The position numbers were made by a program, and so were the translations under genes. The notes under the pieces are model-generated. The model had not been told where the DNA came from. It saw nothing but the letters and a program-made list of their open reading frames with translations, and searched no databases. This document shows, piece after piece, positions 1 to 64,000 of a DNA stretch of 64,000 nucleotides. Positions within the stretch are counted from its first letter, which is position 1. Each line of letters begins with the position of its first letter. The stretch covers positions 27,528,001 to 27,592,000 of the forward strand of contig NW_026262626.1 of the NCBI RefSeq assembly GCF_021869535.1, in the 5' to 3' direction. This stretch comes from Mytilus californianus (taxonomy: Eukaryota).

Positions 1-189
1 TAAAGGAGAAGGAACCAACACTACAGTGTGGATGAAAAGAAAGACACACTTGCAAAACAGTAGGTCACACTAAAAACTATCGCTTAGACCAATTCGAAAG
101 TTCACCAGACTTGAAGAGTAACGTATGTTTGCTGTTCAACATCATATTCCAAATCCACGCATTAAATAATAATTTTACTCATTTTGTAT

Positions 190-310
190 AGGGGCCCTCG
201 GTGTCCGGGTGGTCCGGGATTTCCAGCTTCCTCCACAAATACAAACTGGTCGCCATGATATAGCCAAGTGAACAGAAAGTTGCGTATAACACCAACGATC
301 AATCTATCAT
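190..310 (+). mobile_element. tRNA-derived SINE fragment (V/Meta-SINE-like)
   Basis: ccggg..tcc.g.ttcctccac.aata.aactg.tcgcca.gatat ... caccaacgatcaatc pattern with a short repeat tail; family assignment is from memory. Confidence 0.45.
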
Positions 311-3300
311 TATTTGGATAGTGTTTTGGCGATTATTCTTATCACAGATTTTTAAATAAGCTTAGACTGATATGTACTGGAAAAATGACATAGAACGTTG
401 CTGAACTTCAAGAAAATTAGCAAACGGATAATTGATTTAACAAGAATTTACAATTACCTTAATCTATAATGAATTCGTTTCAGGTATGTATGTTATCAAC
501 ATGAAATGCATACCAGCAGGAAAATCCTTATAAAACAACGAAGGATCAATAAAAACCGAATGGATATCAATAGTGTTATACGTAAAGTTGACACAGAGAA
601 AGCATATCGATACATGAGGGTCTGGAAAGGGGAGGGGGGGGGTCTTCATTTCTGTATTCTTTAAAAATGGTAAAGCTATTTTTGTCTATTCTTTACTTTT
701 TGGCTATGCTCACAATCCCTCTATTCATTATATTTTAGTTCCCCATTATTCTCTGTTTTGTTACTTTGAGTCCGTTTTTCTCTATTCGTTTTTCTACCAT
801 TATGCCTTATTCGATAATTCCCATGCACACATCCTCATCAAAGGAGAAATGAAGCTCACTTTTTACTCAATTCCAGTTGAGAAGGAAGTGATTTGTGCGT
901 ATTACAACATAAGCACAACCTATAAGGAAACATTTTTTTGTAGTTAAGGCGATCAATCACATAAAAATGTCATGAGTATTCTTTTAATAATGGTTAAGTA
1001 AAGATAAAGTCTGGTAATTATTATAACATTGTTAAACTAGACCAATGAATAATGCAAGCAGATTACTTTTTTTTTATCAAAGAATATAGACCAATTATCA
1101 ATATTGCTTTTGATAATATTCTTGTTTGTGTAATGGTTTTCTTTGTGTATAGGAATGTACATATGTTATTACCACCTAAATAGTTATTATATACAATACT
1201 TTACGTCATCTTTTAAAACAGTACATACTACCATACGGTATGGGTTTTTCTCATTGCTGAAGGTCGTACGGTTGCCTATAATTGCTTACATCCACTTCAT
1301 TTGAACTTTGGTGGATAGCTGTCTCATTGGCAATCATACCACGTCTCCTTATTTTTTTACTAGATATATTTAAGATTCAAATTATATCATCAGATATATA
1401 TCAATAAGAAATGTATTCTTCGACATAAAGTATTAAAGCAGGTTTTAGCGGCAACTAACTGACAAAGTTTTTCATTTCTAAATGAAGATACAAACTTTTT
1501 GTCATTACACAAGTTATAAAATTAATCCTATGTTTTACTGCTACAATGTACAATATATATATTTCGATGGTGCGTGAAATATTTGCCGCTTGACGTTAAG
1601 CAAAATGCAATCAATTAATCATATGATTTTAGTTAAAATTTGAAATTTTTATTCATATGAACTTATGTACGTACATTTACTCTCTTATTAAAAAAATCAT
1701 TATTGTTTACTTATATAAAAATTAAGTGGTATGATTGCCAAAGAGATATCTATCCATTAGAGTTCAAATAACTTGTATATAAGCAAATATAGGCCACCTT
1801 ACGGCCTTCAACAACGAGAAACCCCATACCGAATAGTCAGTTTTAAAAGGCCCCGATATGTGTAATGTGAAACAATTCAAACGAGAAATATAACAGCCTA
1901 ATTTATACAGGCGGAAACCCAGTTGAAATAGAACAAAAGAATCGAAGCTCTTTGTTAGAGAAGGCGATAAATGCTTACTGTAATGTTTACTGTAGTAACA
2001 CAAATTTTAAAAGTTAATAGAAACAAATAAAATGACAGTTTTTTGCTAAATTACGAAATATTTTATCATAAAAACACAATTTGCATAAGTTTTCAATTTA
2101 TCTATTACATAATTAAGCAGAACAATTAGATATCAAGTCGACGACATGGGTGTCTATTAAGTTGGATCTAAAAAATGCATAACCTCCGATTTTTCAAAAA
2201 ATTTTACCACGGACGGAAAACATATCAATCTATTTGTTCCTTAATTTTCGTTTCTGCCCTTCCATTATGTGACTCAAGAAAAAATTCCAAAAAATGGGCA
2301 ACAATTGCATCGAAAAGAGAAAATCGAGTGCACCTTTTTATGTTAGGGCGTGTTTGAGTTGAATATTTTGTCTTGAAAACGTAAAAAGCAAAAGTATTTG
2401 ATACATCATCTCGCTTCAGATTCTATCATTTTTATATATCAAGGCTACAGGTTGACTTTATAACATCGAAAATTCACAGTACTAAAAAAATGAAATATAT
2501 AGGTCAAGTGAAATACCTTTCTAATGAATCATAATAGCAGAGTAGGTGTGTTCGAATAGCAAATTTTTACTAAAAGTACTTGACGACAGACTTTTAAGTT
2601 GGATCTTAAAAATGCATATCTTCGAAAAAACTTCATTTTTTGTGTGTGATATCTAGGGTTTATAGTCTTCAACCACTGAAAATTTTTAGTCTGCCCTTCC
2701 ACGAAATATTGAATTAGAATTTTTTTAAATGTTTATGAATTTTCGAAAATTCCACCTGACAACCGATCAGACAATAGTTATAAGTAGACTGAATGCAGAC
2801 ACTAACTGATGTTCGTTAGCTAGTAGATACATTTGTCTTTTAAAATACAACTGGCATATAAGGATCGTAATGGTGCTATGCGGATAAATTTATCGGTTTT
2901 CAAGAGCTAAATTGGCAGCGCGTCATCCCTACAATGGCTTCCATTTTTACGATTGTAAAAATGAACTGGCGTAATGGGGAGATAATTTTGACGAAGTAGA
3001 ATCCTGACTGTATAACAGTACAATATACAAAAACTATTATGATAGGCATTCAACAACGACAACCATTGAATAACAGGCTCCTGACATAAAGAATGTGGCG
3101 GATTTAAACATGTCTGTGAGCCTTCAACCCCCATCCCCACTAGCCTAGGACAGTAGTGTACATGTAACAGCACATCATAAGAACAATCTGTAAATTTTTT
3201 TTAGTTACAAATGGATTTTTATGTCTTGTTTTATTCTTATAAGACATAGAGAAATATTTCAGAAAAATAGGACAGAGTCGTGTTCGCGTGTATTTTTAAT

Positions 3301-14287: not shown

Positions 14288-17200
14288 ACTTGTATTGATC
14301 ATGACGTCTGTTTGAGAGAGGGGCCAATATCCTTTTAATGTACCTCAAAGTGAACTTGAAATATCATTGATATTTAATAAAATAATTGACTTAGCTTAAT
14401 CATTTGTGCTGTTTTGAACCACAGAGGACCATAGAATAAAGATGTGAAAACTATGGAGTTATTAAATGTTTCCAAAAAACTTAATTTCCAGCATGATGTC
14501 AAAATAGGGATTTTTCATTCGAAGAAGCACCTTCATAAAGAGCCCGACATTATGTAATGTATGTAAAAACGGTGCTGTAGAAAATAGAAGTAAAGCTATG
14601 TTCGCATTACTTTTTTCCTGTTTCGTAGCGAGTACAAAAACATCTTAAACATTCAGAGATCGACATTGCTGGAACGAAGATTGCGGAAAGGATATCTACA
14701 CAGTCATATAAATACATCATTCTATCATATCATGTTGCTTATGAATGTAATAGAAAATGATTCTATTTGCAGGTTAATCTTAGAAAAACATAGAAATTAT
14801 AACACTAATCTAGAAAACTGTAGACATTTAGTCTTTTCACATTGTCTTAATACACATACTACATCTCTAAATATTCAGATTTTGGACTCATGTTGTGCTA
14901 CTATACAATGTCTAATGTATTTATAGTTGTAATTCTTGTAGAATTTGTTTTTATCAAACGGCATGGTAATATTGTAGCTACATTCAAGTAATCAAAATTA
15001 ATATTTAAATATTAAGTAGGTTTTTAATTTCACGGACAACTTAACATTTGCGATGATGGAATAATTGATGAAAAAAGAAAAATGAACAAATTAAATACTG
15101 TTTATAAATTAGGAGATAACTGTATTGTATTTCAAAGCTTGGTCTATATAAAACGTAGGTTTTACTGTCGCAAATTGAGACGTCCTGGCGTGGCCTATGC
15201 AAATGCCACATTGCAAACTGCACATACACATACATCATACAAAGCCTATGATATTGCGTTGACAGAACTAGAACCTAGTACAATCTAAACTAAAAAGATG
15301 TATAAAGAATCTAAAGAATCAAGGAAATGAATTCAATGTAAATGTGATTATAATGAGAGAAAAAGGTGTTTTTGCAAAGGACGTTGAACAACTGGAACCC
15401 TATTCTTTGTAACTCTTTCACAAAATAAATTCTAGCAGCTTAACTAATTTGATTTGGTTTGATGACTTAACCTAAAAGAAAAATAAATTAAAAAAGAGAT
15501 CATCGCTCTTAATATTTATGAAATACTTGTCACTGAACGTTGAGCAAAAACCTATAATCAATCAACCCAAATCTTATGATAATAATGTAACATAAAATAT
15601 TTGGAAATTCTGAAAGCTTTAACCAATGACGGGCATATATGGCTAGTCTACGCTACTAAAAGGGCAAATCATATGAAACGGTCAACCAATATTCGACTCA
15701 TGTGTCTTTGAAGAAAGATCCAGTGAATAATTCGCGATGTATCGGAATGGTGTTTTGAATTAAATACAGTGTAATGTTACAAATGCCACCGAAGGCACAA
15801 GAGGGGGCCGGGATACATGGATATGTAAAGTTTATAGAGCATCAGTATATACATTTCATGGTTTATTTGAATTCACACTTCCTGAGTTTCCGTTCCCAGT
15901 TTTGTATGCTTGTGTACGTCGCATTTGCGCATGGTTTCGGAATTTTAATAATTGCAGGCCTTTGGAATTTTCGAAAAAAAAATATTTGGTAAAAGGTGGG
16001 AAAGGGGGTTGCCTCGACGTTTTATGAACCATAGATTTTTTAATTTTCAATTTTTTCTCATGAAATCTCATGAAAAAAAAAACCTTAAAAAAGTTTTTGT
16101 AACTTTTTGAAATAGTGAATTTTACCTTGATAAATGTCACAGTCTACGGTATTGCAAAAATAAATGTAGAAAAGAGCATTATATTTCAGGGAAATTAAAT
16201 CAATTACAAAGGTTGAATGAACTAAACTTGGGCATTGTTTCATATTGCTTCATCCGAATAATTCAGTCTTTTTATACAACTGCTATACGATAGCTACATT
16301 AACGCCTGAATACACAGACAATTAAAAAATCGTTAATTAATCATTCGGAATTAGCTCTGGGTTTACCTATCTCGATAAAATTTCCTGCAGGACATTAATC
16401 AAAATCCAGGATTCGTGAAGAGTTTTAAGTCGAATAGGAAATCAAGCCCCCGCAAGTAGGAAAGATCGATTACGGGGAGGGACTGAATTATTCATTTTAC
16501 ATATTCCTAAAAGGGGAAATGTTTTTATTTCAACTTGGCAAAATGCGTCCGATAAATCAGAAACACATATTGATCTTCTCTCTTAAAAATTAATATTCAT
16601 GATCATTTTCTGCCATTAAACATATTTGAAGCACAAACTAATTGAGTTTCTATTTATTCAAAATCTTCTAACATTTTATGCCAACATATACATGCATAAC
16701 TATTTACAATGAACATTAGTCCATTTACCACACAAAAAAGATATAATGGGCAAACATTTTATTATGGTTTGCAACATAATATATCCCACAGAGCGTAACA
16801 GAAATATAAGCGTGCAATATTATTTGATAATCACTAGTGCAAACATACTATTAGTTTCAAATTACCGATGCCATTCGTGACAAAAATATGATATCAACAG
16901 TTTTTCCAGCTGTCTCGCTCCTTTCGGAGTTCCATCAGTTTATGTTTTTTTTTACCTTGATTTGTCTCTTTAACTACTCAATCAATTTACGAGATTTGAA
17001 CATCGATAAACTTCTGCAGCCTTAATTGGACACTTACACTTTACAAGATTCTGTCAGGTTTACCAAACTTCTGCAGCTTTAATTGGACATTTGCACCTTA
17101 CAAGATTCTGTCAGGTTTACCCTTTAACAGATTCTGACAATCCTGCCCTAAAAAAATTTTGTAAAGTTTGACCCAAGAACAGTTTTAGAGAATTCTAGCT

Positions 17201-24205: not shown

Positions 24206-30449
<6,244 letters not shown>

Positions 30450-49000: not shown

Positions 49001-50732
49001 GTTTTCATTTTTTAATATTCAGCAACAATGGCAAATTATTTTGTACGAGATTTCAGATTTATTGTATTATTCCTGCTTGAATTGTTTTACATTTCTCATG
49101 TGAGAGCATTTTCAAGCATACCATACGGTATGAATTTAGCACAATATTGAAGGCCGTATGGTGAAAAGTAAAATAGTAAAAATGCCAAACTCCAAGGAAA
49201 ATTCAAAACGGAAAGTCCTTTATCAAATGGCAAAATCAAAAGCTCAAACACATCAAACGAATGGAAAACAACTGTCATATTGCTTACTTGGTTCAGACAT
49301 TTCCGTATGTAGAAAATGGTTGATTAAACCTGGTTTTATAGCTACAGTTGGTAACATTAACGTCATTTGGGCTCTGGTGGATAGTTGTCACATTCACAAT
49401 CATTACATAGCTTCTTATTTTTCTTTAGCTGTACAGGCAATTATACACCAGACCAAAATATCATTACACATAATATTATCTATGACGTTAAATGGTACAA
49501 ATCTGATTATTTTGAAATGACCAGACCACAGGCATACAAAAAAAAAAAGGTTAAAAAACAACGCATTTAACTAACAACATTTTTTGTTAAAATAAGAGGA
49601 TGTCCTAGTTATTTAAAATGAATGATGTTCAACTTTGAATGCTTACAAGTAGAAAAGTCCAATAGCACAATTCTTTTGTTAGGACAATTATCATATATGT
49701 AAGAGGTTAAAAATGACACAACAATCTCCAATACATAGTGAAACCGTGGGCACCGTTCAACATATTACTGATGGTAACTGTTTTGTAAATCGATGGATTA
49801 AACACTAAATCTGTTGTTGTGGTAGACGTCTTTGCTATTTATGGGGCAAAGCTTTATACAAATTACTGTGATTTTTAACATTACTTATTGTACTCTTTCA
49901 CGTAAACGACGACCAATTAGGCCATAGATATGTTCAATAGATGATTTATTTTAAGCGTCTCACTATGAATTGTATAGACTTATAAAATAACAAGTTCGAC
50001 GTTTGATTCATAGAATGAGACTGTGGCATCTGTGATTGATGTGAACCGCAGTTCTACTTTCTACGATTTTTGTTCTTGTTTGACAGAATTTGTACTTCAT
50101 TATAGATGTAACTTTCTTCAACTTAAAAAAAAACAACAACATTTTTTTTGCATAGTTTATATAATTCAAGCTGCCGCTGCCATAAAAGATATTACATGTT
50201 ATACAATGTTATATTAATAATAATATTTTTTTTTAGAAAAATCAGGGTGGTACGACACTTTTTCCAGGTTTATGTATTTCCCTGTTGATACAATATGCAA
50301 GGGCTTGTGTCATCACGATTTCCTAACTTAATGATTGCGGCATACAAGAAAATGTTTTGTCAAGAGAGTAGACTATGAAAAAGTTAGTGTCAATCTTAAA
50401 GACGCTATCATGAATGGTTGACCGTTATGAAATACCATTTACAAAATGATATGTTTTACTTCTAGTAGTCACGTGCACAATCTCGCCCTCTTTTCCTGGT
50501 TAAGGCCATCAACGCATACAATTTTATTTTGCAGAAAGTTACCATGAAAGTAGTAAAACGTCAGATGACACTTGTGGATAAGGAACTGGTTATTCTTCTG
50601 AAGCAATTAAATATTCTCCCATTAATTGCGAGGTTCAAGTCACTTAAACTTTTTGTTTTCTGTGAAGTGTTTTGTCTAATTTATGTTTTCTTTAAATTTT
50701 CGTCCCTTTTTTCCAGCAGTTGCGTTGGTCTC

Positions 50733-51360
50733 TGTTTAGCTGACCTCACCCGAAAGTTAAATTGAGCTAATCTCAGAACAGAACTTGGTGTCAGTCGTCA
50801 GCTAACTTTTCCAAAAAGCGTTAAACTACATGGCCAATATGGAACCAAACTTGGCCATTATATACGATCTTTGGGCTATCTAGTTGTGTTGGGCTATCTA
50901 GTTGTGTCCGATGACCCTCGCCTACCAACCAACATGGCCAACATTGCTAAATATAGAACTTAGAAGTAAAAGTTTTGTCTACAATTTTGAAAACCACTTC
51001 AGACAGAGAAAAATCAGACAAAGGCGTATAATTAAGAATGCTGAGATCTACCTACTGTCCAACATTATAAAAACTGTTAGACGATTTCATTAATGAGTTA
51101 TTGCCCTTAAATAACAAATTTTCTCTTTTTTTCAGGAATAGCAAAAATATGCAGCCAGATATACACTTAAGTAGAAAAATGAATTCGTCAACTGACTCCT
51201 TATAGAAGTTATTGTCCTTGATGACATTTTTATCAATTATTTGCCCATTACTTTGAAAACTATATTATAAAAGACGAGAAAGAATTTTTCAAAGGCAAAC
51301 ATTACATGCAGGACAAAATCTACATGTAAATGGCCAATATTGTCAGTCAACTTTATATTG
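50733..51360. mobile_element. Decayed HINE-like fragment in reverse orientation (duplicate at ~60062-60680)
   Basis: tttagctgacctcacccgaaag..gagcta start, and ccaacatggcc..ctaaatatagaac resemble the reverse complement of the HINE end and internal repeat. Confidence 0.45.
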
Positions 51361-53113
51361 AGTTTTTCTCTGAGGATTTTTATCCATTTTTGCATTTCAG
51401 TAGGGAAACATAATGTAAATAAAGAAAAAAAAAACTACAAACAACAAAAATTATAAATGAATTTACTATGCTTTTCGAAAACTAGAAATAATTTGCAACT
51501 ATATATCAATAAATGCCGAAGTTGATATTTAGAGCTACACCCCTAGTTTTTTTAAACTGTGAATATTTGAGGCATGATAAATATGAATCTTAATGTCTCA
51601 TTGTTATAGAAGACCTTAAAAATAACGGGAGTTTATGGATATTTTGAAAAAGAACCTAGAAAATATTCCAACATCTAGAATAAGCATGACGTATAAGCAA
51701 TTCATTTCGAAATAGTTTAATTCGCTCAAGTCGCCAATATAAAAAGGTAAATCCCCTACTTGAAATTTCCCATTTCTGCCAAACCATTGACATGATTGAT
51801 GCAGTCGATAAACATTTCTTTTATCCCTTGGTAACATTTATGTCCAGCGAATGACGAGAATTCAATTCTAATTTCTTTAATAAATTTTCAACAAATATTA
51901 AATGAATACAAAAAATGAAATAAATATTACATCGTTCAACAAAGAAGCTTCCATTTTCTTCTAGGGTCTAATTATATAAACAATCAAAAGTTAATGTGGC
52001 AATTGATGGAAACAAAATGTAAATAAAAAAAAAAATATGAAAATGCATGTTAGAACTATCTGTCTTAGAAAATGGCAAACAATAGACTAGTTTCAAAAGT
52101 AAAATCTGACTGGTCAATTTCATGATGCAGGTCTTATAGAAATTGTTAGTCAGCGTGCGACCGTTATCATACGCAACGACCGTTTTCACTGCTACTAGTG
52201 ATAATTGTTAAACCTTTACGAACCAATGGGTGACCGTTGTGACTACAAGCAGCATACTGATATTTTTGACAATTTACTAATATTAGTAGGTGATAATATA
52301 AAACAGTAAAAACTAAAAATATGCCAAAAAAATTTCAATGTTAAACTGTTGTTGTTTACATTTTTCGTACGTTTTTCAAGTTTTTAACACCATTCGATTT
52401 CTTTCTAAAAATAGAAGTTTTATATGATACAGCTCCAACTTGTTATTAATAAACTACGGATTTGCGCTACAAATACCGGACTCGATAAAATCACGTGACT
52501 GTTAAAACATTCAAGATAAAAATTACAACCGCGATTTCACAGATAGAAGCCGAAAGGGTCTTGCCGCTGAGACAATGATTCGATAAATCCTATGACTTAT
52601 GTACAGAGTTCTGCAGGTCATTGATATATGCTAATTAATCGTTGTTATTCCTTTTAAACAATGGGTCGAGAAAGGGATAAATTGTCAATAAATAAGAAAA
52701 ATATTATTTCACCAATTCGGCTGATCTCCTCATACAACAGATATTTAATATGAAAAAAATACAAATATATTGTCAATTAAAAATGATCAAGATATATTAA
52801 AAAAACAGTTCTTGCTATTTATAAAATTTTGTTGTTCGCTTTAATTCTTTGACAGAAAGTTAATAAAATCATGACTACTTGTCTAGACAGTTGTTGTGTT
52901 AAGTTACAGAGAGAGAGAGACGAGATATACTAAATGGATATTAAAACTCAAACTGACAACACCATGGCACAGATATAAAATTGAATCAATCAGAGCAAGA
53001 ATTATATAACGGAAAGGAAGTAAACAACCTAAATCTCCGACCCAGATCTCTCCGTTTAAACTAAATTCCTACCATAATGACAAAAACGACCATAGCATAA
53101 ATGACAACTTACC

Positions 53114-54709
53114 TTAAAATTGTGTGAAATGCCGAAGCAAATTGCACAAGAGAAAAATAATAGATGTATACTGTGTCGTTTCAAAGTATATACTACGTTC
53201 CTCTACTATTTTTTGGAAAATGATTTTCCAATTTATCTTTTCCTTTTTATTAGAATTATTTCATATAAATATATTTAAAATCTCTGTTCCGTTCATCAAG
53301 CTTAAATGAAGTTCCAAAATATCACGACATGAATCAGTTATCAGCCATTTGTAGCTTGAACCTAACGTATTACATGTATATATATTTTAAATACAGAATT
53401 TTGCCTTTTAAATTTGATGGTCGTATCAAAAGCGAGGTATTATCCTCATTTGTCTACATTACGCTACATTACTTTTCCAACAGCGTCTGGAAAATCCCAT
53501 ATTATAAAAATCATCTGCCAAACAACTTTTGTCAACTAGAACCAAGCTCTGCAGGAATCTTTGTCTGTAAATACCTGAATGCATTTGGATTGTTTGTGTG
53601 TATCTTGATATCAAAATGAATACCATGGCCAAAATGTATTCCGATTGGCTGAAATTGCAAAGATATTCTGACGAATGTCCTGGCATATCGTTAGAACGAT
53701 TCACAAAAAGTGCTTTAATTATTTAAAGGTGTTGATGCCAATTCAAATTCACATAACCACCATCATTGATCATAGTTTAAAATAGAACCGCATGAACAGT
53801 TAATACAGTAACACTTAGTTTCTTCTCAGAAACTCTCTCACACATTGAAACCAAATCTTGCAAACAGAAATCCGACTGATCCGTTTTTGTTGCCAAACAA
53901 TTTAAGAAATGACCACTACGGTAAAGCATAATACAACCATACAGAAAATGCGTACAAACAGAAAACGTTTCAAACATCGTTGTATCAAATCATGTAAAAA
54001 GACACGTAAGGTGTTCACATACAAATTTCGATGCCTATCTGAAATCTAAATACTTATCAAAATTACCACGTTTATCAATTGACACTCCAGACGCGTGTGT
54101 CGTCTACATCAGAATTATCAGTGGTGCTCGAATCAAAAAGTTAGCAGACCAAGTCAAATACGAAATTGAAAACCAAAAGTTTTGAATAATTGTTAAAAAA
54201 CGGCTAAGTGTATATAAGCTTGTGAAAAAATCTTAGTGTTTAGAATGTTTCTACATTTTATAAACAATCAATCTACAGAAACGGCACGTTTCAATGATAG
54301 TTCATGTCAGTACAAAAGTGTTGAACATTTGGCTGCTTACGTCCATCAGCAGTTGCATCAACCCAGTGGTTGAAAAAAATCTATAAAAGATACATATATT
54401 GTCGCCACTGTAAAGCATAGTTTAACATTGGACCATATTTGAAATACATACAACAATTTTAATTTAAAACCGTCTCAAACATTGTCAAATCGTGAGCAAT
54501 TGATACTATACTAGTTTTCATTTTTTCTGTGATCTGAAATTAAAGAAGGCATTCAACATGAAACAAAGTTTAACATTTATACCAGGAGATTTATACAGGA
54601 GATTATATTTCCATATATTACTATCTAAATCATATGAAATACAGTATGAGAGTCCCCATGTACCATGACTCAAACATACTAATATAATTCCAACAATTAC
54701 TATCCACAT
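53114..54709 (-). pseudogene. Decayed gene-like unit: signal-peptide-like first exon plus a long disrupted exon-like block; product unidentified
   Basis: 54709-54583 reads MWIVIVGIILVCLSHGTWGLSYC.. and ends at a G|GT donor. Block 54039-53114 is bounded by ttcag and aag|gtaagt, is Cys/aromatic-rich, but has stops in all frames. Confidence 0.35.
54050..54395 (-). mobile_element. Roughly full-length (~350 nt) decayed retrozyme monomer with mutated hammerhead
   Basis: Hammerhead relic at 54085-54125 reads CTGATAA..GACAC acgc GTC, so both core boxes are mutated. The element begins and ends with related tatcaaa..tac sequence, consistent with one permuted monomer. Confidence 0.65.
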
Positions 54710-55124
54710 TTATATGTGTCCACACTGCTTCATGTTATAAGATAAATTAAGTACGGTTTCATTTAGACAAACTGTTTTGAGTTTAAGAAATCAGAGCTAC
54801 TTAACCTGTTTCATAATTGCAAAATTGGAAAATCCGAATCATGTGATATAGAAGTGCTTTCAAGTAGAAAAGTCCGTAGAAATGTATACTTCTTAACGAT
54901 TAACCAATTAAAGAGGGCGTTTGCTCAAAAGTAATGAATACACTTCTGGTTAAATTACATTCAGTAATAAATGACAGATCTTCAAAATTATGCAATGTCA
55001 AGGACATAAGCAAATATAATTCATTGATCAAAACTGAAGGCAAACACAAAATTTCTTTACTTATGCAGGAATGCTGTAATCAGTGAAGTTCGGACAAAAT
55101 TAGCACAAGGATACAAAGAACACA

Positions 55125-56153
55125 ATGAAAAAAATACTCGTTTGTTTTACTTTGATGTTTTTGTTGGAGGTACAATGTAAATGCCAGTGGAATTCATTTG
55201 GCCCTGGTGATAAAAGCTGGTACGAACAAGCGGATGGAAGATGGTCAGAATTTAGCTACAATCGTAACATGAAAACTTTTGACCATATACATACAGTATA
55301 TTCTAGTGAAAAAGCCGTTGTCATACAACAAGATGGGTTACTTCCTTTGATTTTAAATTCAAATGCAGCATACTATGGCAAGAACAAGTTTGCTTCTGGA
55401 AGATGGACTTCAACTGGGCGTTGGGAGGGTAATTGGTTTCCACAATATGGAGGCGGATCCGGATATTACTTACAATCGAATGACGATTGGAAGGAATACA
55501 GAAATGGATATTATGAGAAAACATTTCGACATATACAAACAATTAACGTTTCTGAATTTGCAGTTATTTTACATCAGCGTTTTATCTGGGCGTTCGTTTT
55601 GACTGATGACTGTGCCTATTACAATGGAATTCAGCAATTCTATGGAGAATGGAGACATTCTTGCCATTGGAAAGGTAAACGTAGTAATGGCATTGAACTA
55701 TCAGAGTTCAGAAGAATTTCACCTAATTCATGGCACGAATATACAAATGGGGACTACCTTAAAACATTCAATCACATTCAAACTGTTCAGAATGAAGGAG
55801 TTGTGGTGGTTATTCAACAAAATTTTCAATGTTTGAAACCCTTGATTTTGAGCCAAACGTCTGCTTATTATGATAATGTAAAATTTGCAAACGGACATTG
55901 GGACGATCAAAACACTCGATGGGTTGGATACCGTTTTAGTGGAGGGTCAGTTAAATTTGAAAAATTTGGGACAAATTGGAAAGAATATGAAAACGAAAAT
56001 TATTTAAAAACTTTCAATCATGTCAAACAGATTCGAAGTGATCGTGCAGTCGTTATTATGCAACAATACTGTTTTTGGCCGCTTATCTTAGATGAATTTG
56101 GCGCATCCTATAATGGTCTCGAATTTGCCTTGGGGAACTGGATCAATCAATAA
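55125..56153 (+). CDS. Uncharacterised secreted protein with four tandem ~82-aa aromatic-rich repeats, single coding exon
   Basis: 342-codon ORF in AT-rich DNA. N-terminus MKKILVCFTLMFLLEVQC is hydrophobic. KTF motifs fall at aa 50, 132, 213 and 295, each within W.EY.NG.Y.KTF.H(I/V)...VV(I)..Q...LIL....A.Y....F..G.W. A pyrimidine-rich acceptor (ttctttacttatgcag, ~55053-55068) suggests a 5'UTR intron. AATAAA overlaps the stop codon. Confidence 0.88.
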   Translation: MKKILVCFTLMFLLEVQCKCQWNSFGPGDKSWYEQADGRWSEFSYNRNMKTFDHIHTVYSSEKAVVIQQDGLLPLILNSNAAYYGKNKFASGRWTSTGRWEGNWFPQYGGGSGYYLQSNDDWKEYRNGYYEKTFRHIQTINVSEFAVILHQRFIWAFVLTDDCAYYNGIQQFYGEWRHSCHWKGKRSNGIELSEFRRISPNSWHEYTNGDYLKTFNHIQTVQNEGVVVVIQQNFQCLKPLILSQTSAYYDNVKFANGHWDDQNTRWVGYRFSGGSVKFEKFGTNWKEYENENYLKTFNHVKQIRSDRAVVIMQQYCFWPLILDEFGASYNGLEFALGNWINQ

Positions 56154-57189
56154 AAAAAAAATTAAATGCACAAAGAAAACTCTGACGAGTAAGGCATGCA
56201 AAACAAAACATTTATAAGTGCCAATTTTATTTACAAACATTTTATCATTATATTCATATAGTGACATTAACCATAACATTTTATTTTTTTAATGCACCTA
56301 CCTAACATACGGCTAAATCATATACCATTCGAAAGCACATCATCTGTACTATCTTTTTTGCCCGGTGTCAAATATTCGTGTATGGTGCAGTTTTCGTCAA
56401 ATCACGATGAAAATTCTTTAAGTTTGTCCGTTTTAGAAATCAATGAAACCAAAACGAACTTAAATTATCATACCTTTGACGAGATTTGTGATCTCCTATA
56501 ATTTTTGTTATAGTGATATACATGTAATTAAAACTTACGATTGGGGTCATTTATTCAAAACTCAATAATTAACTACTTTTAAAGTTTTCAAACATTTAAA
56601 GTGGTCTTTAGTATTATGTTTACTAAAAAAGAGTTTTTAATGTTACAAAATGGTCTCATTCCTCATTTCATAATTTCTCACCGATTCTCTACATCCCCAT
56701 CCCAAACACCCGACAAAAAAAGAAATGTGATTGACAATAATATAGGAATTCATAAAATTTCGAACAAGTTGATAATATATAATTATGTTAGCACATTGTG
56801 CTCGTATGCATGTGTGTTTGTGTGTGTTGGGAGGGTTCTTCGTTTATTTCTTGAGCCAGACTTTTTTCAATACATATCTGACAATTGTTATAATTTTTAA
56901 AATTTAAATAAATCTTCTAAATTTTTATGGCTCTTGACTCAAGAAAATGTAACTCTTATGGAAAAACTGGGCTGTTATATTTGTGACTGTTTTGAATTAA
57001 GGAGATCAGGTATGCATATTGACACTAAGTCAAGTAAATGATTTGAGAATGAATGCTCATAATGTAATTTTATTCTTTTATTCACAATATATATGTGGTT
57101 TTTGGCTCTGATTCTGACCAATGCTAATATACTAAATATATATATATATTCAAGTGATTATTATTGTTGTTGTTACCAATTATGTAAAT

Positions 57190-57265
57190 CAATTGTATCT
57201 GATTTTATGCCCTTTATGGGCCCTGTAATTTGGGAAATAAAAATATTCTATTCTATTCTATTCTA
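57190..57265 (+). mobile_element. Probable LINE 3' tail fragment ending in (ATTCT)n
   Basis: aaataaaaatattctattctattctattct: a polyA-signal-like motif followed by a short tandem tail. A similar architecture occurs at 6030-6070 with (GAATCT)n. Confidence 0.35.
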
Positions 57266-57379
57266 ATTTGATTCCTATCTTCATAATGGACTAATGAGAT
57301 ATTTGACAATTTCGAGTTCAGCGAATATTAAATGGCAAAAGCGTACCTGATAAATACATATATACATATCTCCATAAGT

Positions 57380-57700
57380 GAAAACAAACTGACAACGCCA
57401 TGGCCAAAAATAAAAAGACAAACAGACAAATAATAGTACAGATGACACAACATAGAAAACCAAAGACTAAGCAACACGAACCCCACCAAAAACTGGGGGT
57501 GATCTCAGGTGCTTCGGAAGGGTAAGCAGATCCTGCTCCACATGTGGCACTCGTCGTGTTGCTTATGTTATTACAAATCCGGTAAATAGTCTAATTCGGT
57601 AAGTCACATTCATGAAAAGGGAGGGTAGTGTAGTTACGACATAAGGAACATATCCGATATCATCTGTGAAACGGTTATTCCATAACGGTCAACCAACTTA
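57380..57700 (-). mobile_element. 3' end fragment of second PLE-type family
   Basis: Aligns by eye to 40445-40795. Confidence 0.65.
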
Positions 57701-57735
57701 TAAACATGTATCTAGAATAAGAGTTTATATTCCAA

Positions 57736-58115
57736 TAGGTCTGCATGCAGACAGACCTGAATGAAAAGTGCAAAAAAAAAATAAACAACTTAGGTCTACA
57801 TACAACAGGTTTGTATGCAGGCATACAGACCTGAAGTATTGCCAAAATAAATTATTTTGAAGGTTCTACATATACCAGATTTGTATGCAGGCATACAGAT
57901 TTGACAAATTCTAGTATACGCATAGAGTGAAAGTTTAGCATACGCCAGGTCGGTATGCATGCATACAGACTAAGAAATGCCATTTATTATCTCAAATTAA
58001 AGTTCGGCATACACCAGATTAGTATGCAAGCATACAGACGTAAGATATGTAAATTTATTAGGTAGATGAGATTTCAACATACACCAGGTCCGTATGCAGG
58101 AATAAAGACCTGACA
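57736..58115. repeat. Array of six 28-bp palindromes at 69-70 bp period with variable AT-rich spacers
   Basis: Unit starts at 57736, 57806, 57876, 57946, 58015 and 58085; consensus CAGGTCTGTATGC-AG-GCATACAGACCTG. Confidence 0.8.
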
Positions 58116-58203
58116 AATACAAGTAAGTGAAAAAATACTTAATTTAGCATAACATTCACTTAAACATCTATAATAAAGATGGGTAATTGATATGTTATAT
58201 ATA

Positions 58204-58994
58204 TGTTCCAGACCATATGAGTATTTGAACCGTACGCGTACGGTCCGACCAAACGCGTACGGTCGGACCGTATGAGTATACTCATATGGTCTAGAACGAG
58301 CTGTACCATACATGTATTTAGACCGTATGGGCTAATTTTAGACAGATATTTATCAAAAATCTTTTATTGAGTTTTACAAATGAATATAATTACAATTAGA
58401 TGAATAAAGTGAATAAATCAACATGTTTTGTTAAGGCATGTTCCTTTGCATTTCCATCTCTTGCTAGCAAGAGAAAAACTTGAGGCAATGAAATTCCTTC
58501 TGTTTTTGAATGTGCAGTTTCAATTTTGCGTGTCAAAAGTTCTATATCACCCATATCGTAACAAGAGTTTAATATGCCAAATTCACATGATAGTTTGATC
58601 AAAGTTGCATCTTGACCAATAATATCATCAACCCTACATAATAATCGGGGAAAATCCTATAAACAACTGGTATTCTTACAGTAACAAAGCAACCTTTCAA
58701 TTTCATGTATTACTGACATGTTAAATACAGGAGATTAACAAATTAAATTAACGTGACTTTTTCACATAGTTAAAATATTAAGTTTTTATTTCAATTACAA
58801 TTGGACTATTTATAATAATTCGAGATTTCTGTTATGTTGATCCGTAATATACATTGTATCTTATAAACTTGTCCGACTTCTTAAAATTAGGCAGACCGTA
58901 CGCGTAACAGTCCGACCGTATGCGTATTTTGAAAAAGTACGCAAACGGTCCAGATCGTACGCGTACGGTCCAAATACTCATATGGTCTGGAACA
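58204..58994. mobile_element. MITE with long TIRs, TA flanks and subterminal CCGTACGCGTACGG palindromes
   Basis: TA|TGTTCCAGACCATATGAGTATTTG ... CAAATACTCATATGGTCTGGAACA|TA. Confidence 0.8.
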
Positions 58995-59559
58995 TATATA
59001 TTTCAAAGATGACATAAAAGTATAACAAAAATGCAGAATAAGTAATGTATGAAGGTTTTATTGTCTCAACTTTTTTCTGATTGTTGAAATAGTTTATTCT
59101 AGCATCATATGAAAAAGGGTAATGCTAAAATGATGTGGTTTTGAATTTGCATTAACGAAAAAAGACCCAAAATCTTGCAAAAAAATGACAAGCAAATATA
59201 AATAATGCAATACAGAGACTTTTTAACGCGAATTATGACAATCAAGCCAAAAGATGTAGCTTTTCACACAAAAATGAGTTAAGTGGCATATGAGAATTTC
59301 TAATTTTAGATGAGAAAGTATTTGTTATAATCTTAATCACTATGAAAACAATCATTTATGTCAACAAAGAAAAACAAAATTGCATATAGACATTCTATAG
59401 ACAAAGCACATAAGCAAAAATGACGGAAATTAAAGAATATCAAACCTGACCATTGCACAAAAACGCAAAAGCGGGATATATAAATACAAAGCCACGTCAA
59501 AAGAATAACACTCAAAATAGACTTAACGGTAAACATGTTATATTTATAATATTTTTTTT

Positions 59560-62500
59560 TTTTTAAAAAACCAGGGTGGTACGACACTTTTTCCAGGTTT
59601 ATGTATTTTCCTGTTGATACAATATGCAAGGGCTTGTGTCATCACGATTTCCTAACTAAATGATTGCGGCATACAAGAAAATGTTTAGTCAAGAGAGTAG
59701 ACTATGAAAAAGTTAGTGTCAATCTTAAAGACGCTATCATGAATGGTTGACCGTTATGAAATACCATTTACAAAATGATATGTTTTACTTCTAGTAGTCA
59801 CGTGCACAATCTCGCCCTCTTTTCCTGGTTAAGGCCATCAACGCATACAATTTTATTTTGCAGAAAGTTACCATGAAAGTAGTAAAACGTCAGATGACAC
59901 TTGTGGATAAGGACCTGGTTATTTTTCTGAAGCAATTAAATATTCTCCCATTAACTGCGAGGTTCAAGTCACTTAAACTTTTTGTTTTCTGTGAAGTGTT
60001 TTGTCTAATTTATGTTTTCTTTAAGTTTTCGTCCCTTTTTTCCAGCAGTTGCGTTGCTCTCTGTTTAGCTGACCTCACTCGAAAGTTAAATTGAGCTAAT
60101 CTCAGAACAGAACTTGGTGTCAGTCGTCAGCTAACTTTTCCAAAAAGCGTTAAACTACATGGCCAATATGGAACCAAACTTGGCCATTATATACGATCTT
60201 TGGGCTATCTAGTTGTGTCCGATGACCCTCGCCTACCAACCAACATGACCAACATTGCTAAATATAGAACTTAGAAATAAAAATTGTGTCTACAATTTTG
60301 AAAACCACTTTAGACAGAGAAAAATCAGACAAAGGCGTACATTTAAGAATGCTGAGATCTACCTACTGTCCAACATTATAAAAACTGTTAGACGACTTCA
60401 TTAATGAGTTATTGCCCTTAAATAACAAATTTTCTCTTTTTTCAGGAATAGCAAAAATATGCAGCCAGATATACACTTAAGTAGAAAAATGAATTCGTCA
60501 ATTGACTCCTTATAGAAGTTATTGTCCTTGAAAACATTTTTATCAATTATTTGCCCATTACTTTGAAAACTATATTATAAATGACGAGAAAGAATTTTTC
60601 AAAGGCAAACATTATATGCAGGACAAAATCTACATGTAAATGGCCAAAATTGTCAGTCAACTTTATATTGAGTTTTTCTCTGAGGATTTTTATCCATTTT
60701 TGCATTTTAGTAGGGAAACATAATGTAAATAAAGAAAAAAAAACTACAAACAACAAAATTTATCAATGAATTTACTATGCTTTTCGAAAACAAGAAATAA
60801 TTTGCAACTATATATCAATAAATGCCGAAGTTGATATTTAGAGCTACACCCCTAGTTTTTTTAAACTGTGAATATTAGAGGCATGATAAATATGAATCTT
60901 AATGTCTCATTGTTATAGAAGACCTTAAAAATAACGGGAGTTTACGGATATTTTGAAAAAGAACCTAGAAAATATTCCAACATCTAGAATTAGCATGACG
61001 TATAAGCAATTCATTTCGAAATAGTTTAATTCGTTCAAGTCGCCAATATAAAAAGGTAAATCCCCTACTTGAAATTTCCCATTTCTGCCAAACCATTGAC
61101 ATGATTGATGCAGTCGATAAACATTTCTTTTATCCCTTGGTAACATTTATGTCCAGCGAATGACGAGAATTCAATTCTAATTTCTTTAATAAATTTTCAA
61201 CAAATATTAAATGAATACAAAAAATGAAATAAATATTACATCGTTCAACAAAGAAGCTTCCATTTTCTTCTAGGGTCTAATTATATAAACAATCAAAAGT
61301 TAATGTGGCAATTGATGGAAAAAAATGTAAATATGAAAAATATGAAAATGCATGTTAGAACTATCTGTCTTAGCAAATGGCAAACAATAGACTAATTTCA
61401 AAAGTAAAATCTGACTGGTCAATTTCATGACGCAGGTCTTATAGAAATTGTTAGTCAGCGGGCGACCGTTATCATACGCAACGACCGTTTTCACTGCTAC
61501 TAGTGATAATTGTTAAACCTTTACGAACCAATGGGTGACCGTTGTGACTACAAGCAGCATACTGATATTTTTGACAATTTACTAATATTAGTAGGTGATA
61601 ATATAAAACAGTAAAAACTAAAAATATGCCAAAAAAATTTCAATGTTAAACTGTTGTTGTTTACATTTTTCGTACGTTTTTCAAGTTTTTAACACCATTC
61701 GATTTCTTTCTAAAAATAAAAGTATTATATGATACAGCTCCAACTTGTTATTAATATAAACTACGGATTTCCCATAGGTGCGCTACAAATACTGGACTCG
61801 ATAAAATCACGTGACTGTTAAAACATTCAAGATACCAATTACAACCGCGATTTCACAGATAGAAGCCGAAAGGGTCTTGCCGCTGAGAGAATGATTGGAT
61901 AAATCCTATGACTTATGTACAGAGTTCTGCAGGTCATTGATATATGCTAATTAATCGTTGTTATTCCTTTTAAACAATGGGTCCAGAAAAGGATAAATTG
62001 TCAATAAATAAGAAAAATATTATTTCACCAATTCGGCTGATCTCCTCATACAACAGATATTTAATATGAAAAAAATACAAATATATTGTCAATTAAAAAT
62101 GATCAAGATATATTAAAAAAAACCAGTTCTTGCTATTTATAAAATTTTGTTGTTCGCTTTAATTCTTTGACAGGAAGTTAATAAAATCATGACTACTTGT
62201 CTAGACAGTTGTTGTGTTAAGTTACAGAGAAAGAGACGAGAGATACTAAATGGATATTAAAACTCAAACTGACAACACCATGGCACAGGTATAGAAATTG
62301 AATCAATCAGAGCAAGAATTATATAACGGAAAGGAAGTAAACAACCTAAATCTCCGACCCAGATCTCTCCGTTTAAACTAAATTCCTACCATTATGACAA
62401 AAACGACCATAGCACAAATGACAACTTACCTTAAAATTGTGTGAAATGCCGAAGCAAATTGCACAAGAGAAAACTAATAGATGTATACTGTATCGTTTCA

Positions 62501-64000
62501 AACTATATACTACGTTCCTCTACTATTTTTTGGAAAATGATTTTCCAATTTATCTTTTCCTTTTTATTAGAATTATTTCATATAAATATATTTAAAATCT
62601 CTGTTCCGTTTATCACCCTTAAATGAAGTTCCAAAATATCACGACATGAACCAGTTATCAGCCATTTGTAGCTTGAACCTAACGTATTACATGTATATAT
62701 TCTAAATACAGAATTTTGCTTCTCAAATTTGATGGTCGTATCAAAAGCGAGGTATTATCCTCATTTGTCTACATAACGCTACATTACTTTTCCAACAGCG
62801 TCTGGAAAATCCCATATTATAAAAATCATCTGCCAAACAACTTTTGTCAACTAGAACCAAGCTCTGCAGGAATCTTTGTCTGTAAATACCTGAACGCATT
62901 TGGATTGTTTGTGTGTATCTTGATATCAAAATGAATACCATGGCCAAAATGTATCCGATTGGCTGAAATTGCAAAGATATTCTGACGAATGTCCTGGCAT
63001 ATCGTTAGAATGATTCACAAAAAGTGCTATAATTATTGAAAGGTGTTGATGCCAATTCAAATCCACATGACCGCCATCATTGATCATAGTTTAAAATAGA
63101 ACCCCATAAACAGTTAATACAGTAACACGTAGTTTCTTCTCAGAAACTCTCTCACACATTGAAACCAAATTTTGCAAACAGAAATCCGACTGATCCGTTT
63201 TTGTTGCCAAACAATATAAGAAATGACCACTACGGTAAAGCATAATACAACCATACAGAAAATGCGTACAAACAGGTTCCCAAAAAACGTTTCAAACATC
63301 GTTGTATCAAATCATGTAAAAATACTCGTAAGGTGTTCACATACAAATTTTGATGCCTATCTGAAATCTAAATACTTATCAAAGTTACCACGTTTATCAA
63401 TTGACACTCCAGACGCGTGTGTCGTCTACATCAGAATTATCAGTGGTGCTCGAATCAAAAAGTTAGCAGACCAAGTCAAATACGAAATTGAAAACAAAAC
63501 GTTTTGAATAATTGTTAAAAAACGGCTAAGTGTATATATGCTTGTGAGAAAAATCTTAGTGTTTAGAATGTTTCTACATTTTATAAACAATCAATCTACA
63601 GAAACGGCACGTATCAATGATAGTTCATGTCAGTACAAAAGAGTTGAACATTTGGCTGCTTACGTCCATCAGCAGTTGCATCAACCCAGTGGTTGAAAAA
63701 AATCTATCAAAGATAGATATATTTTCGCCACTGTAAAGCATAGTTTAACATTGGACCATATTTGAAATACATACAACAATTTTAATTTAAAACCGTCTCA
63801 AACATTGTCAAATCGTGAGCAATTGATAATATACTAGTTTTCATTTTTTCTGTGATCTGAAATTAAAGAAGGAATTCAACATGAAACAAAGTTTAACATT
63901 TATACCATGAATTCCAACGAGGAACAAATACAGGAGATTATATTTCCATATATTACTATCTAAATCATATGAAATACAGTATGACAGTCCCCTTGTACCA
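59560..64000. repeat. Copy 2 of the recent segmental duplication (runs off the window)
   Basis: As for copy 1; differences are scattered substitutions and short indels. Confidence 0.95.
63374..63715 (-). mobile_element. Duplicate of the decayed retrozyme monomer
   Basis: Same sequence as 54050-54395, inside the segmental duplication. Confidence 0.65.

What the first reader, a model, noticed from the sequence alone, without database searches (positions are those of the whole stretch)
55125..56153. Orphan secreted protein built from four ~82-aa repeats in a single coding exon
Seen: a clean 342-aa ORF with a signal-peptide-like N-terminus and four repeats sharing W..G...F......W.EY.NG.Y.KTF.H..T.....VV..Q....LIL....A.Y....F..G.W, with few Cys and many Trp/Tyr/Phe. 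I do not recognise it as DM9, tachylectin, jacalin, C1q or FReD. Inference: an all-beta multivalent binding protein (lectin-like or immune effector). The intronless CDS next to intron-rich genes raises retroposition or horizontal origin as options. It sits in an immune-gene, duplication-rich neighbourhood.
Basis: partly seen in the sequence, partly recalled or inferred. Interest (0 to 1): 0.75.

Follow-up and report, generated by a model that had tools for sequence, protein, structure and literature searches.

The report
Mussel-only secreted four-repeat beta-barrel protein
This is a real, transcribed mussel gene for a secreted protein built from four aromatic-rich all-beta repeats of an unnamed family seen in only a handful of sequences; it is a shortened, recently duplicated and apparently dispensable copy whose function is still untested.

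Summary
Window 55125-56153 (+) is an intact 342-aa ORF with a signal peptide and four ~80-aa repeats that are 30-41% identical.

Stranded RNA-seq covers it on the sense strand only, with no splice joints.

It matches no Pfam family and no solved structure by sequence. A profile of the repeat, scored against 1.84 billion proteins, found only six real relatives:
- A Mytilus edulis protein at 82% identity and a 45%-identical protein. Both carry the four repeats, then an RxRR site and a further ~170-aa domain. That domain is absent from this gene and this genome.
- A few one- or two-repeat proteins.
- No bacterial hit.

So it is nearly an orphan, and it is a truncated member of a tiny unnamed family. 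Neither horizontal transfer nor retroposition is supported.

A confident AlphaFold model (pLDDT 86.9, pTM 0.79) is all-beta with eight strands per repeat. It is not a propeller. Its lobes resemble generic eight-stranded up-and-down barrels (lipocalin, avidin or PliC-like) at Z of 7.9 or less, which is background level.

The gene lies in a 9.3-kb tandem duplication, and the second copy is a pseudogene. Other individuals carry nonsense and frameshift versions, and pN/pS is about 1.

Most likely it is a dispensable, lineage-restricted secreted binding protein. The ligand is unknown.

The parts
55078..55124 (+). 5' untranslated leader; transcript contigs of two runs begin at 55078 and 55085
   Evidence: table 8: X2 record 9 starts at 55078 and X1 records 1-2 start at 55085. 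RNA depth is zero over 52400-54960. An AG with a pyrimidine tract at 55053-55068 leaves a non-coding 5' exon possible.
55125..56153 (+). Complete coding sequence, 342 codons plus TAA, with no intron
   Evidence: Stranded RNA reads lie on one strand only and show no joints.
55125..55178 (+). Predicted signal peptide (residues 1-18); the mature protein starts at KCQW
   Evidence: Sequence read. The KCQW start is conserved in P0002 and P0004. The cleavage site is inferred, not predicted by a tool.
55185..55415 (+). Repeat 1 (residues 21-97)
   Evidence: domain score 123 bits
55416..55661 (+). Repeat 2 (residues 98-179)
55662..55910 (+). Repeat 3 (residues 180-262); it starts with the conserved Cys180, which is equivalent to Cys20 of repeat 1
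55911..56150 (+). Repeat 4 (residues 263-342); the ORF stops here, where relatives continue into an RxRR site and a C-terminal domain
56154..57324 (+). Transcribed 3' region (long 3' UTR or read-through) that runs into a highly expressed repeat at 57325-57718
   Evidence: table 2: depth 0.5-4 on the same strand. X1 contig spans 55426-56887.
56260..56412 (.). High-copy ~150-bp interspersed element inside the 3' region
   Evidence: 893 first-look candidates genome-wide, 90-93% identical over query positions 107-259.
50206..59384 (.). Unit A of a tandem segmental duplication; it carries the intact gene
   Evidence: four collinear blocks, 96.1-96.9% identical to 59535-71484.
59535..64000 (.). In-window part of duplication unit B. 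Its gene copy lies just past the window end (equivalent to 64899-65935, L002:1501-2537) and is a pseudogene.
   Evidence: The copy has ATG changed to CTG, a 1-nt deletion at the equivalent of 55884, a stop inside repeat 4, and a ~430-bp insertion just upstream of the gene.

Best explanation
What it is. Window 55125-56153 is a genuine, expressed, single-exon-CDS gene of a Mytilus mussel. It encodes a secreted, aromatic-rich, all-beta protein of four ~80-residue repeats.

Family. The repeat defines a tiny, unnamed, lineage-restricted family. The ancestral form is signal peptide, four repeats, a dibasic RxRR processing site, then a ~170-aa C-terminal domain. This copy is a derived short form that ends right after repeat 4.

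Predicted structure. Each repeat supplies eight short strands. The strands assemble into small eight-stranded up-and-down barrel-like lobes that straddle repeat boundaries, with a two-repeat super-period.

Evolutionary state. The gene sits in a recent 9.3-kb tandem duplication whose other copy is already dead. Nonsense and frameshift versions occur in other individuals. It therefore behaves like one of the young, dispensable, birth-and-death genes typical of mussel genomes.

Inferred mechanism (not shown). Once secreted, its four barrel lobes act as a multivalent binding scaffold for an extracellular ligand, most likely a carbohydrate or other repetitive surface, probably in defence or surface recognition. 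Each lobe displays the same conserved aromatic-plus-polar set: W.E[YF], KTF.H, QQ, AYY, G.W.
For: Shown:
- Intact ORF and repeats.
- Sense-strand-only RNA-seq over 54961-57324, zero depth upstream and no joints. The expressed allele carries an in-frame 3-nt deletion.
- Only two copies in the 1.65-Gb genome.
- Relatives: P0002/P0003 from M. edulis at 82% identity, and P0004 at 45%, both with RGRR/RKRR plus a shared C-terminal domain. P0006, P0007 and P0009/P0010 have one or two repeats.
- The C-terminal domain is absent from the window and from the genome.
- No Pfam or PDB sequence match.
- AlphaFold model with pLDDT 86.9 and pTM 0.79; all five models lie within 85.8-86.9; eight strands per repeat.
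- The lobes at 61-141 and 223-306 match eight-stranded barrels.
- The tandem copy is a pseudogene.
- A Q117* allele appears in runs of two studies, and P0005 is a frameshifted version.
- Between species, family-conserved repeat positions change less than other positions: 10/88 against 52/234, p = 0.027.

Background: mussel dispensable genes are younger, more often duplicated and four times more often taxonomically restricted than core genes (PMC7653742).

Inferred: the signal-peptide cleavage site and the binding function.
Against: - Constraint within the species looks absent. The listed variants give 22 nonsynonymous to 5 synonymous changes, pN/pS about 1.0, and include a stop. The list is incomplete and may mix paralogues.
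- Fold matches are no better than the tool's stated background (Z of 7.9 or less), so 'barrel' describes a topology and is not a family assignment.
- No ligand, tissue or induction data exist.
- The exact pairing of half-repeats could not be read, because no coordinates are returned.
Confidence: 0.6

Rival explanations
1. It is a gene on its way out. This short form lost the family's C-terminal module and is now drifting neutrally. It is transcribed but has no maintained function, and the intact frame in this haplotype is a survivor by chance.
For: - pN/pS is about 1.0 among the listed variants, including Q117* in runs of two studies.
- The frameshifted contig protein P0005.
- The tandem copy is dead, and window-versus-copy dN/dS is about 0.94.
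- The C-terminal domain is missing.
Against: - A 342-codon frame stays open in AT-rich DNA.
- The expressed allele differs at many sites and by an in-frame 3-nt deletion, yet shows no frame break in the parts covered.
- Family-conserved core positions are preferentially kept against M. edulis (p = 0.027).
Confidence: 0.25
2. It is a carrier or sequestering protein for small hydrophobic molecules or vitamins. It would work like lipocalins or avidins, with each barrel holding one ligand.
For: The VIA-align wide search lists avidins (shwanavidin 3szh Z 6.0, bradavidin 2y32 Z 6.0, zebavidin 4bj8 Z 5.5) and lipocalin-like proteins (4inn Z 5.9, 4gzv Z 5.5, 2joz Z 5.6) on lobes 61-141 and 223-306. 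The protein is rich in Trp and Tyr.
Against: - The Z values are at background level.
- Barrels of about 80 residues are smaller than lipocalins or avidins (110-180 aa) and may have no cavity.
- The model has no lipocalin C-terminal helix.
- There is no sequence match to either family.
Confidence: 0.15
3. It is a proteinaceous inhibitor of an enzyme such as lysozyme or a protease, working like the bacterial PliC/MliC barrels. It would be deployed extracellularly.
For: PliC from Brucella (4mir, Z 6.3), PliC from Salmonella (3oe3, Z 5.8) and PhiA (7dpy, Z 6.0) appear among the barrel matches.
Against: These scores are tied with dozens of unrelated barrels. There is no sequence similarity and no Pfam hit. 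Nothing explains why a mussel would need a four-fold inhibitor of its own abundant lysozymes.
Confidence: 0.07
4. It is an intronless arrival by retroposition of a spliced parent gene, or by horizontal transfer from a bacterium.
For: The coding sequence is unspliced. An A-run follows the stop codon and overlaps an AATAAA. The protein-atlas feature search listed Bacteroidota hypothetical proteins, but at 0.77, below the tool's own noise level.
Against: - No parent or other copy exists in the genome.
- Transcripts run more than 1 kb past the A-run.
- HMMER read 1.84 billion proteins and found no bacterial relative.
- The G+C of the ORF (0.35-0.37) is close to that of its flanks (0.28-0.34).
- The relatives are long eukaryote-style secreted precursors on contigs of 0.28-2.8 Mb.
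Confidence: 0.05

Closest known systems
Lipocalin-like C-terminal beta-barrel domains of penicillin-binding-protein homologues (Pyrococcus abyssi Pab87, PDB 2qmi; Ulm16, 8fek; D-aminopeptidase, 1ei5)
   Same: These are the best structural matches: small eight-stranded antiparallel up-and-down barrels. Values are Z 7.9, 7.2 and 6.9, rmsd 2.4-3.7 A, with 67-78 residues aligned.
   Different: Sequence identity is 6-10% and Z lies within the tool's background. Those domains are single appendages of bacterial or archaeal enzymes. They are not tandem repeats of a secreted animal protein, and their barrels are contiguous rather than built across repeat boundaries.
Avidin/streptavidin family and bacterial or animal lipocalins (calycin-type barrels)
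   Same: Eight-stranded meander barrel topology, aromatic-rich, secreted. Z is 5.3-6.0 on lobes 61-141 and 223-306.
   Different: There is no sequence or Pfam match. The lobes are about 80 residues against 110-180. The model has no lipocalin helix. Biotin-site residues were not identifiable.
PliC/MliC periplasmic lysozyme inhibitors
   Same: A small eight-stranded barrel of 85-100 residues, the closest in size. Z is 5.8-6.3.
   Different: They are bacterial and single-domain, no shared motif was detected, and the scores are tied with unrelated barrels.
Beta-propeller lectins and WD40-like propellers (for example Photorhabdus PLL, tachylectins)
   Same: Repetitive runs of short antiparallel strands. 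Foldseek ranks propellers first by local 3Di similarity.
   Different: TM-scores are only 0.11-0.17. A second look aligns single blades only (35-42 residues, Z of 3.5 or less; best row Z 4.3 is OspA, not a propeller). It is not a propeller.
Dispensable, taxonomically restricted genes of the Mytilus pan-genome (Gerdol et al. 2020, PMC7653742)
   Same: Young, restricted to mussels and a few unknown relatives, recently duplicated in tandem, modestly expressed, with disrupted versions in other individuals.
   Different: Presence-absence or hemizygosity of this locus was not tested here. That class is defined by population behaviour, not by protein family.

Membership tests
Any Pfam family (including DM9, jacalin, C1q, fibrinogen-related, tachylectin, lipocalin, avidin, MliC) | A match to the family profile at or above the gathering score | tested here: not met
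   the only row is IceA2 at E 1.3, 9.5 bits against a cut-off of 25; relatives P0002, P0003, P0004 and P0010 have no family.
Beta-propeller lectins | Five to eight four-stranded blades arranged radially, giving a global structural match | tested here: not met
   Foldseek TM 0.11-0.17 with rmsd 16-24 A. VIA second look: single blades only, Z of 3.5 or less.
Calycin superfamily (lipocalin, avidin) | An eight-stranded up-and-down beta-barrel | tested here: inconclusive
   Z 5.3-7.9, with 67-82 residues aligned on four parts of the model. The tool states that a best Z of 7-8 is typical for models with no true match.
Calycin superfamily (lipocalin, avidin) | Lipocalin hallmarks: an N-terminal 3-10 helix, a C-terminal alpha-helix packed on the barrel, and the structurally conserved regions | tested here: not met
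   The DSSP string of the model shows a single 3-residue helical turn (residues 106-108) and no longer helix. There is no Pfam lipocalin hit.
PliC/MliC lysozyme inhibitors | Family sequence motifs and a lysozyme-inserting loop | not tested
   Only fold resemblance at Z 5.8-6.3. No profile hit.
Processed retrogene | A spliced parent gene elsewhere in the genome | tested here: not met
   Six-frame searches of the whole assembly with P0001, P0003, P0004, P0007 and P0010 found only the window gene and its tandem copy.
Processed retrogene | A poly(A) remnant at the end of the copied mRNA, and flanking target-site duplications | tested here: inconclusive
   An 11-A run starts in the stop codon, but transcripts continue more than 1 kb beyond it. 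Target-site duplications were not sought.
Horizontally acquired bacterial gene | Closest relatives in bacteria | tested here: not met
   seven hits in 1.84 billion proteins. One is the query itself, one (P0008) is a spurious leucine-rich-repeat protein, and none is identifiable as bacterial. The atlas lead of 0.77 is below noise.
Mussel dispensable (presence-absence) genes | Absent or hemizygous in some individuals | not testable with these tools
Nonsense and frameshift versions were seen.
The unnamed four-repeat family itself (P0002, P0003, P0004) | Signal peptide, four W.G...W.EY..KTF.H...QQ..PL.L...AYY.G..FA.G.W repeats, and conserved Cys at the start of repeats 1 and 3 | tested here: met
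   four domains at 123-130 bits in P0001, 96-116 bits in P0002 and 56-86 bits in P0004.
The unnamed four-repeat family itself (P0002, P0003, P0004) | An RxRR site and a ~170-aa C-terminal domain after repeat 4 | tested here: not met
   The ORF stops six residues after the last G.W. tblastn of the C-terminal part on the window gives nothing below E 3.8, and there is no match in the genome.

The most novel reading that the evidence does not exclude
The repeat is a new extracellular binding domain. Consecutive repeats exchange half-barrels, so that two repeats build an interlocked double-barrel module. The family would then be a previously unrecognised mussel or bivalve recognition-protein family: a lectin or pattern-recognition scaffold, whose long form is a furin-processed precursor that delivers a second, equally unknown C-terminal domain.
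Probability: 0.25. Interest if true: 0.6.

Novelty: new variant of a known kind. Interest (0 to 1): 0.4.

Why it matters
Mussels are known for a very large set of young, dispensable, lineage-restricted genes, and almost none of their products have been characterised. This one is a clean test case for three reasons:
- It is a compact, intron-free gene that is easy to express.
- It has a confident all-beta model.
- Its repeat domain belongs to no named family.

Together with its dead twin and its disrupted alleles, it also shows gene birth and death in progress. If the domain proves to be a ligand-binding module, it would add a new family to invertebrate recognition proteins. If it does not, it is one more uncharacterised taxonomically restricted gene, and the wider consequences are modest.

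Tried and rejected
- Pfam on the protein and its relatives: nothing.
- PDB sequence search with the single protein, the repeat profile and P0004: nothing meaningful.
- Protein-atlas look-alikes: 0.77 for P0001 (noise) and no usable hit for P0004.
- Word-based homologue searches:
  - The whole protein found only M. edulis.
  - P0004 whole found only itself.
  - The C-terminal region of P0004 found only itself.
- First AlphaFold run on a near-identical alignment: poor (pLDDT 66.8) and superseded.
- Propeller reading: rejected.
- Internal duplication of a 40-residue half-unit: rejected; hhalign of the a-halves against the b-halves gave probability 0.6%.
- P0008 (2845 aa) is a leucine-rich-repeat NLR-type protein. 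It matches only the AVV.LQ stretch of the profile, so I treat it as spurious.
- Truncation by the nearby high-copy element: not supported, because the element starts 107 nt after the stop.
- Literature: no paper mentions the M. edulis accession, and keyword searches found no description of this family.
I therefore could not read the DNA, introns or neighbours of the relatives, nor name their organisms. Cluster look-ups gave no names.
I replaced it with the reference-based search and left the C-terminal-piece-only genome search out.

Full report
**Observation**

It is the longest ORF in the window. The next are 271 aa (a retroelement), 120 aa and 110 aa. In DNA of about 32% G+C an open frame of this length is far beyond chance.

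Self-comparison peaks at offsets of 82 and 163 residues. Cutting at residues 21-97, 98-179, 180-262 and 263-342 gives four repeats. They are 30-41% identical and share 15 invariant columns.

The mature part holds 16 Trp, 23 Tyr and 21 Phe, and only 4 Cys. The N-terminus MKKILVCFTLMFLLEVQC has the layout of a signal peptide. The mature start KCQW is conserved in relatives. The cleavage site itself is inferred.

**Is it expressed, and is it one exon?**

A stranded RNA-seq run kept as raw reads (X16) covers 54961-57324 only with pairs whose first mate lies on the minus strand. In the usual stranded libraries this means a plus-strand RNA. Depth is zero over 52400-54960, and no joints were found.

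Contigs of two other runs begin at 55078 and 55085. The coding sequence is therefore unspliced and transcribed, with a 3' region of more than 1 kb.

A pyrimidine tract followed by AG at 55053-55068 leaves room for a non-coding 5' exon that I could not see.

The expressed allele differs from the assembly at many sites and has an in-frame 3-nt deletion at 55796.

**Relatives**

Pfam gives nothing. PDB sequence searches with the protein and with a repeat profile give nothing.

The whole 1.65-Gb assembly holds only this gene and one tandem copy.

The word-based search found one other protein: M. edulis CAG2190738.1 (P0002), 82% identical and 492 aa. A 524-aa contig version (P0003) belongs to the same cluster.

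The 'orphan' claim rests on absence, so I spent the full HMMER search on a profile of the four repeats. Seven of 1.84 billion representatives scored at E of 0.001 or better:
- the query itself;
- P0004, 45% identical and 524 aa;
- P0005, a frameshifted Mytilus-like fragment;
- P0006, P0007 and P0009/P0010, which have one or two repeats;
- P0008, a leucine-rich-repeat protein that matches only a short AVV.LQ stretch and is spurious.

None is identifiable as bacterial. The taxonomic range beyond Mytilus is therefore unknown.

**Architecture of the family**

P0002/P0003 and P0004 share four repeats, then RGRR or RKRR, then a ~170-aa domain that is conserved between them. That domain has no Pfam, PDB or word-search relative.

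It is encoded nowhere in the window and nowhere in the assembly. The window protein stops six residues after the last G.W. It is therefore a derived short form of the family.

The tandem copy ends the same way, so the truncation predates the duplication.

A high-copy ~150-bp element lies in the 3' region, but it begins 107 nt after the stop. It is not the evident cause of the truncation.

**Structure**

With an alignment of near-identical sequences the model was poor (pLDDT 66.8).

Adding P0004 and the short relatives (alignment A4) gave pLDDT 86.9 and pTM 0.79. All five models lie within 85.8-86.9. The model is entirely beta, with eight strands per repeat.

Foldseek ranks beta-propellers first, but TM-scores are only 0.11-0.17. 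A second look aligns single blades only, at Z of 3.5 or less. It is not a propeller.

The search that does not lean on Foldseek gives Z of 7.9 or less. The matches are a broad mix of eight-stranded up-and-down barrels:
- the lipocalin-like C-terminal domains of PBP homologues (2qmi, 8fek, 1ei5);
- avidins;
- PliC;
- Atu4866;
- designed barrels.

The tool warns that such Z values are typical of models with no true match. I take this as a topology, not as a family assignment.

Contiguous lobes at about 61-141 and 223-306 each fill a barrel, and they straddle the R1/R2 and R3/R4 boundaries. The remaining half-repeats are matched in discontinuous combinations (19..178, 180..342, 16..341). They evidently pack together, but I cannot read the exact pairing without coordinates.

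Four observations support a two-repeat super-period:
- the lobe pattern just described;
- the stronger self-match at offset 163 than at 82;
- the conserved Cys at the first position of repeats 1 and 3 only;
- the existence of two-repeat relatives.

The two halves of a repeat are not detectably homologous to each other.

**Evolutionary state**

The region 50206-59384 is duplicated in tandem at 59535-71484, with 96.1-96.9% identity.

The second gene copy lies just past the window end. It has four defects:
- ATG changed to CTG;
- a 1-nt deletion at the equivalent of 55884;
- a stop inside repeat 4;
- a ~430-bp insertion immediately upstream of the gene.

Variants listed from four runs give 22 nonsynonymous to 5 synonymous changes, pN/pS about 1.0. 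They include Q117* in contigs of two studies. The list is incomplete and may mix copies. P0005 is a frameshifted version.

Against M. edulis, positions conserved in the other family members change less than the rest: 10/88 against 52/234, Fisher p = 0.027. This is modest evidence that the fold has been kept.

The overall picture matches the young, duplicated, taxonomically restricted dispensable genes described for mussels (PMC7653742). Presence-absence of this locus was not tested.

**Origin**

Horizontal transfer has no support. There is no bacterial relative, the composition is ordinary, and the relatives are secreted precursors on long contigs.

Retroposition has no support. No parent gene exists, and transcripts run past the A-run at the stop codon.

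**Function**

Nothing tests function directly. Three things are shown or confidently predicted: the protein has a secretion signal, it is made of four similar barrel-like lobes, and each lobe carries the same conserved aromatic and polar residues (W.E[YF], KTF.H, QQ, AYY, G.W).

From that I infer a multivalent extracellular binding scaffold, most likely for carbohydrate or another repetitive surface. I put the odds at about one in three.

The rivals are a small-ligand carrier, an enzyme inhibitor, or a decaying gene with no maintained role. A fibrinogen-related exon 31 kb away is weak contextual support for a defence setting.

**Verdict**

The finding is real and largely as described. However, it is a truncated, recently duplicated and probably dispensable member of a tiny unnamed mussel family, with a generic small-barrel architecture. 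It is not a transferred or retroposed gene.

It is worth a structure and a binding screen. It is moderately interesting rather than striking.

Noticed in passing
window 24209-24538 (-): A 110-aa ORF that is the C-terminal exon of a fibrinogen-related domain gene (Pfam PF00147, E 1.1e-23). This confirms an immune-type lectin gene in the neighbourhood.
   Followed up: partly
window 13533-14348 (-): A 271-aa ORF with a YLDDILAL-type reverse-transcriptase motif and no Pfam hit at E of 0.01 or better. It is probably a decayed retroelement fragment.
   Followed up: partly
window 57325-57718: A repeat with very high RNA depth on both strands in all four runs (up to thousands in contig depth) and many loose ends at 57380 and 57698. 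It abuts the palindrome-repeat transposon noted earlier at 57736-58115. In duplication unit B this spot carries about 2.3 kb of extra sequence (67453-69792).
   Followed up: partly
window 56260-56412: A ~150-bp interspersed element with at least 893 first-look candidates in the genome at 90-93% identity (SINE- or MITE-like), sitting in the transcribed 3' region of the gene.
   Followed up: partly
P0002, P0003, P0004 (relatives, not in the window): The long-form relatives carry an RxRR site and a conserved ~170-aa C-terminal domain with no relatives in Pfam, PDB or the word search. It ends near HDEL-like letters (HDELK, HDEFRK). This is a second unknown domain worth modelling.
   Followed up: partly
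L002:1501-2537 and window-equivalent 64375-64808: The pseudogene twin has a ~430-bp insertion right at the point where the intact gene's upstream region meets its transcript start, in addition to its coding lesions.
   Followed up: no
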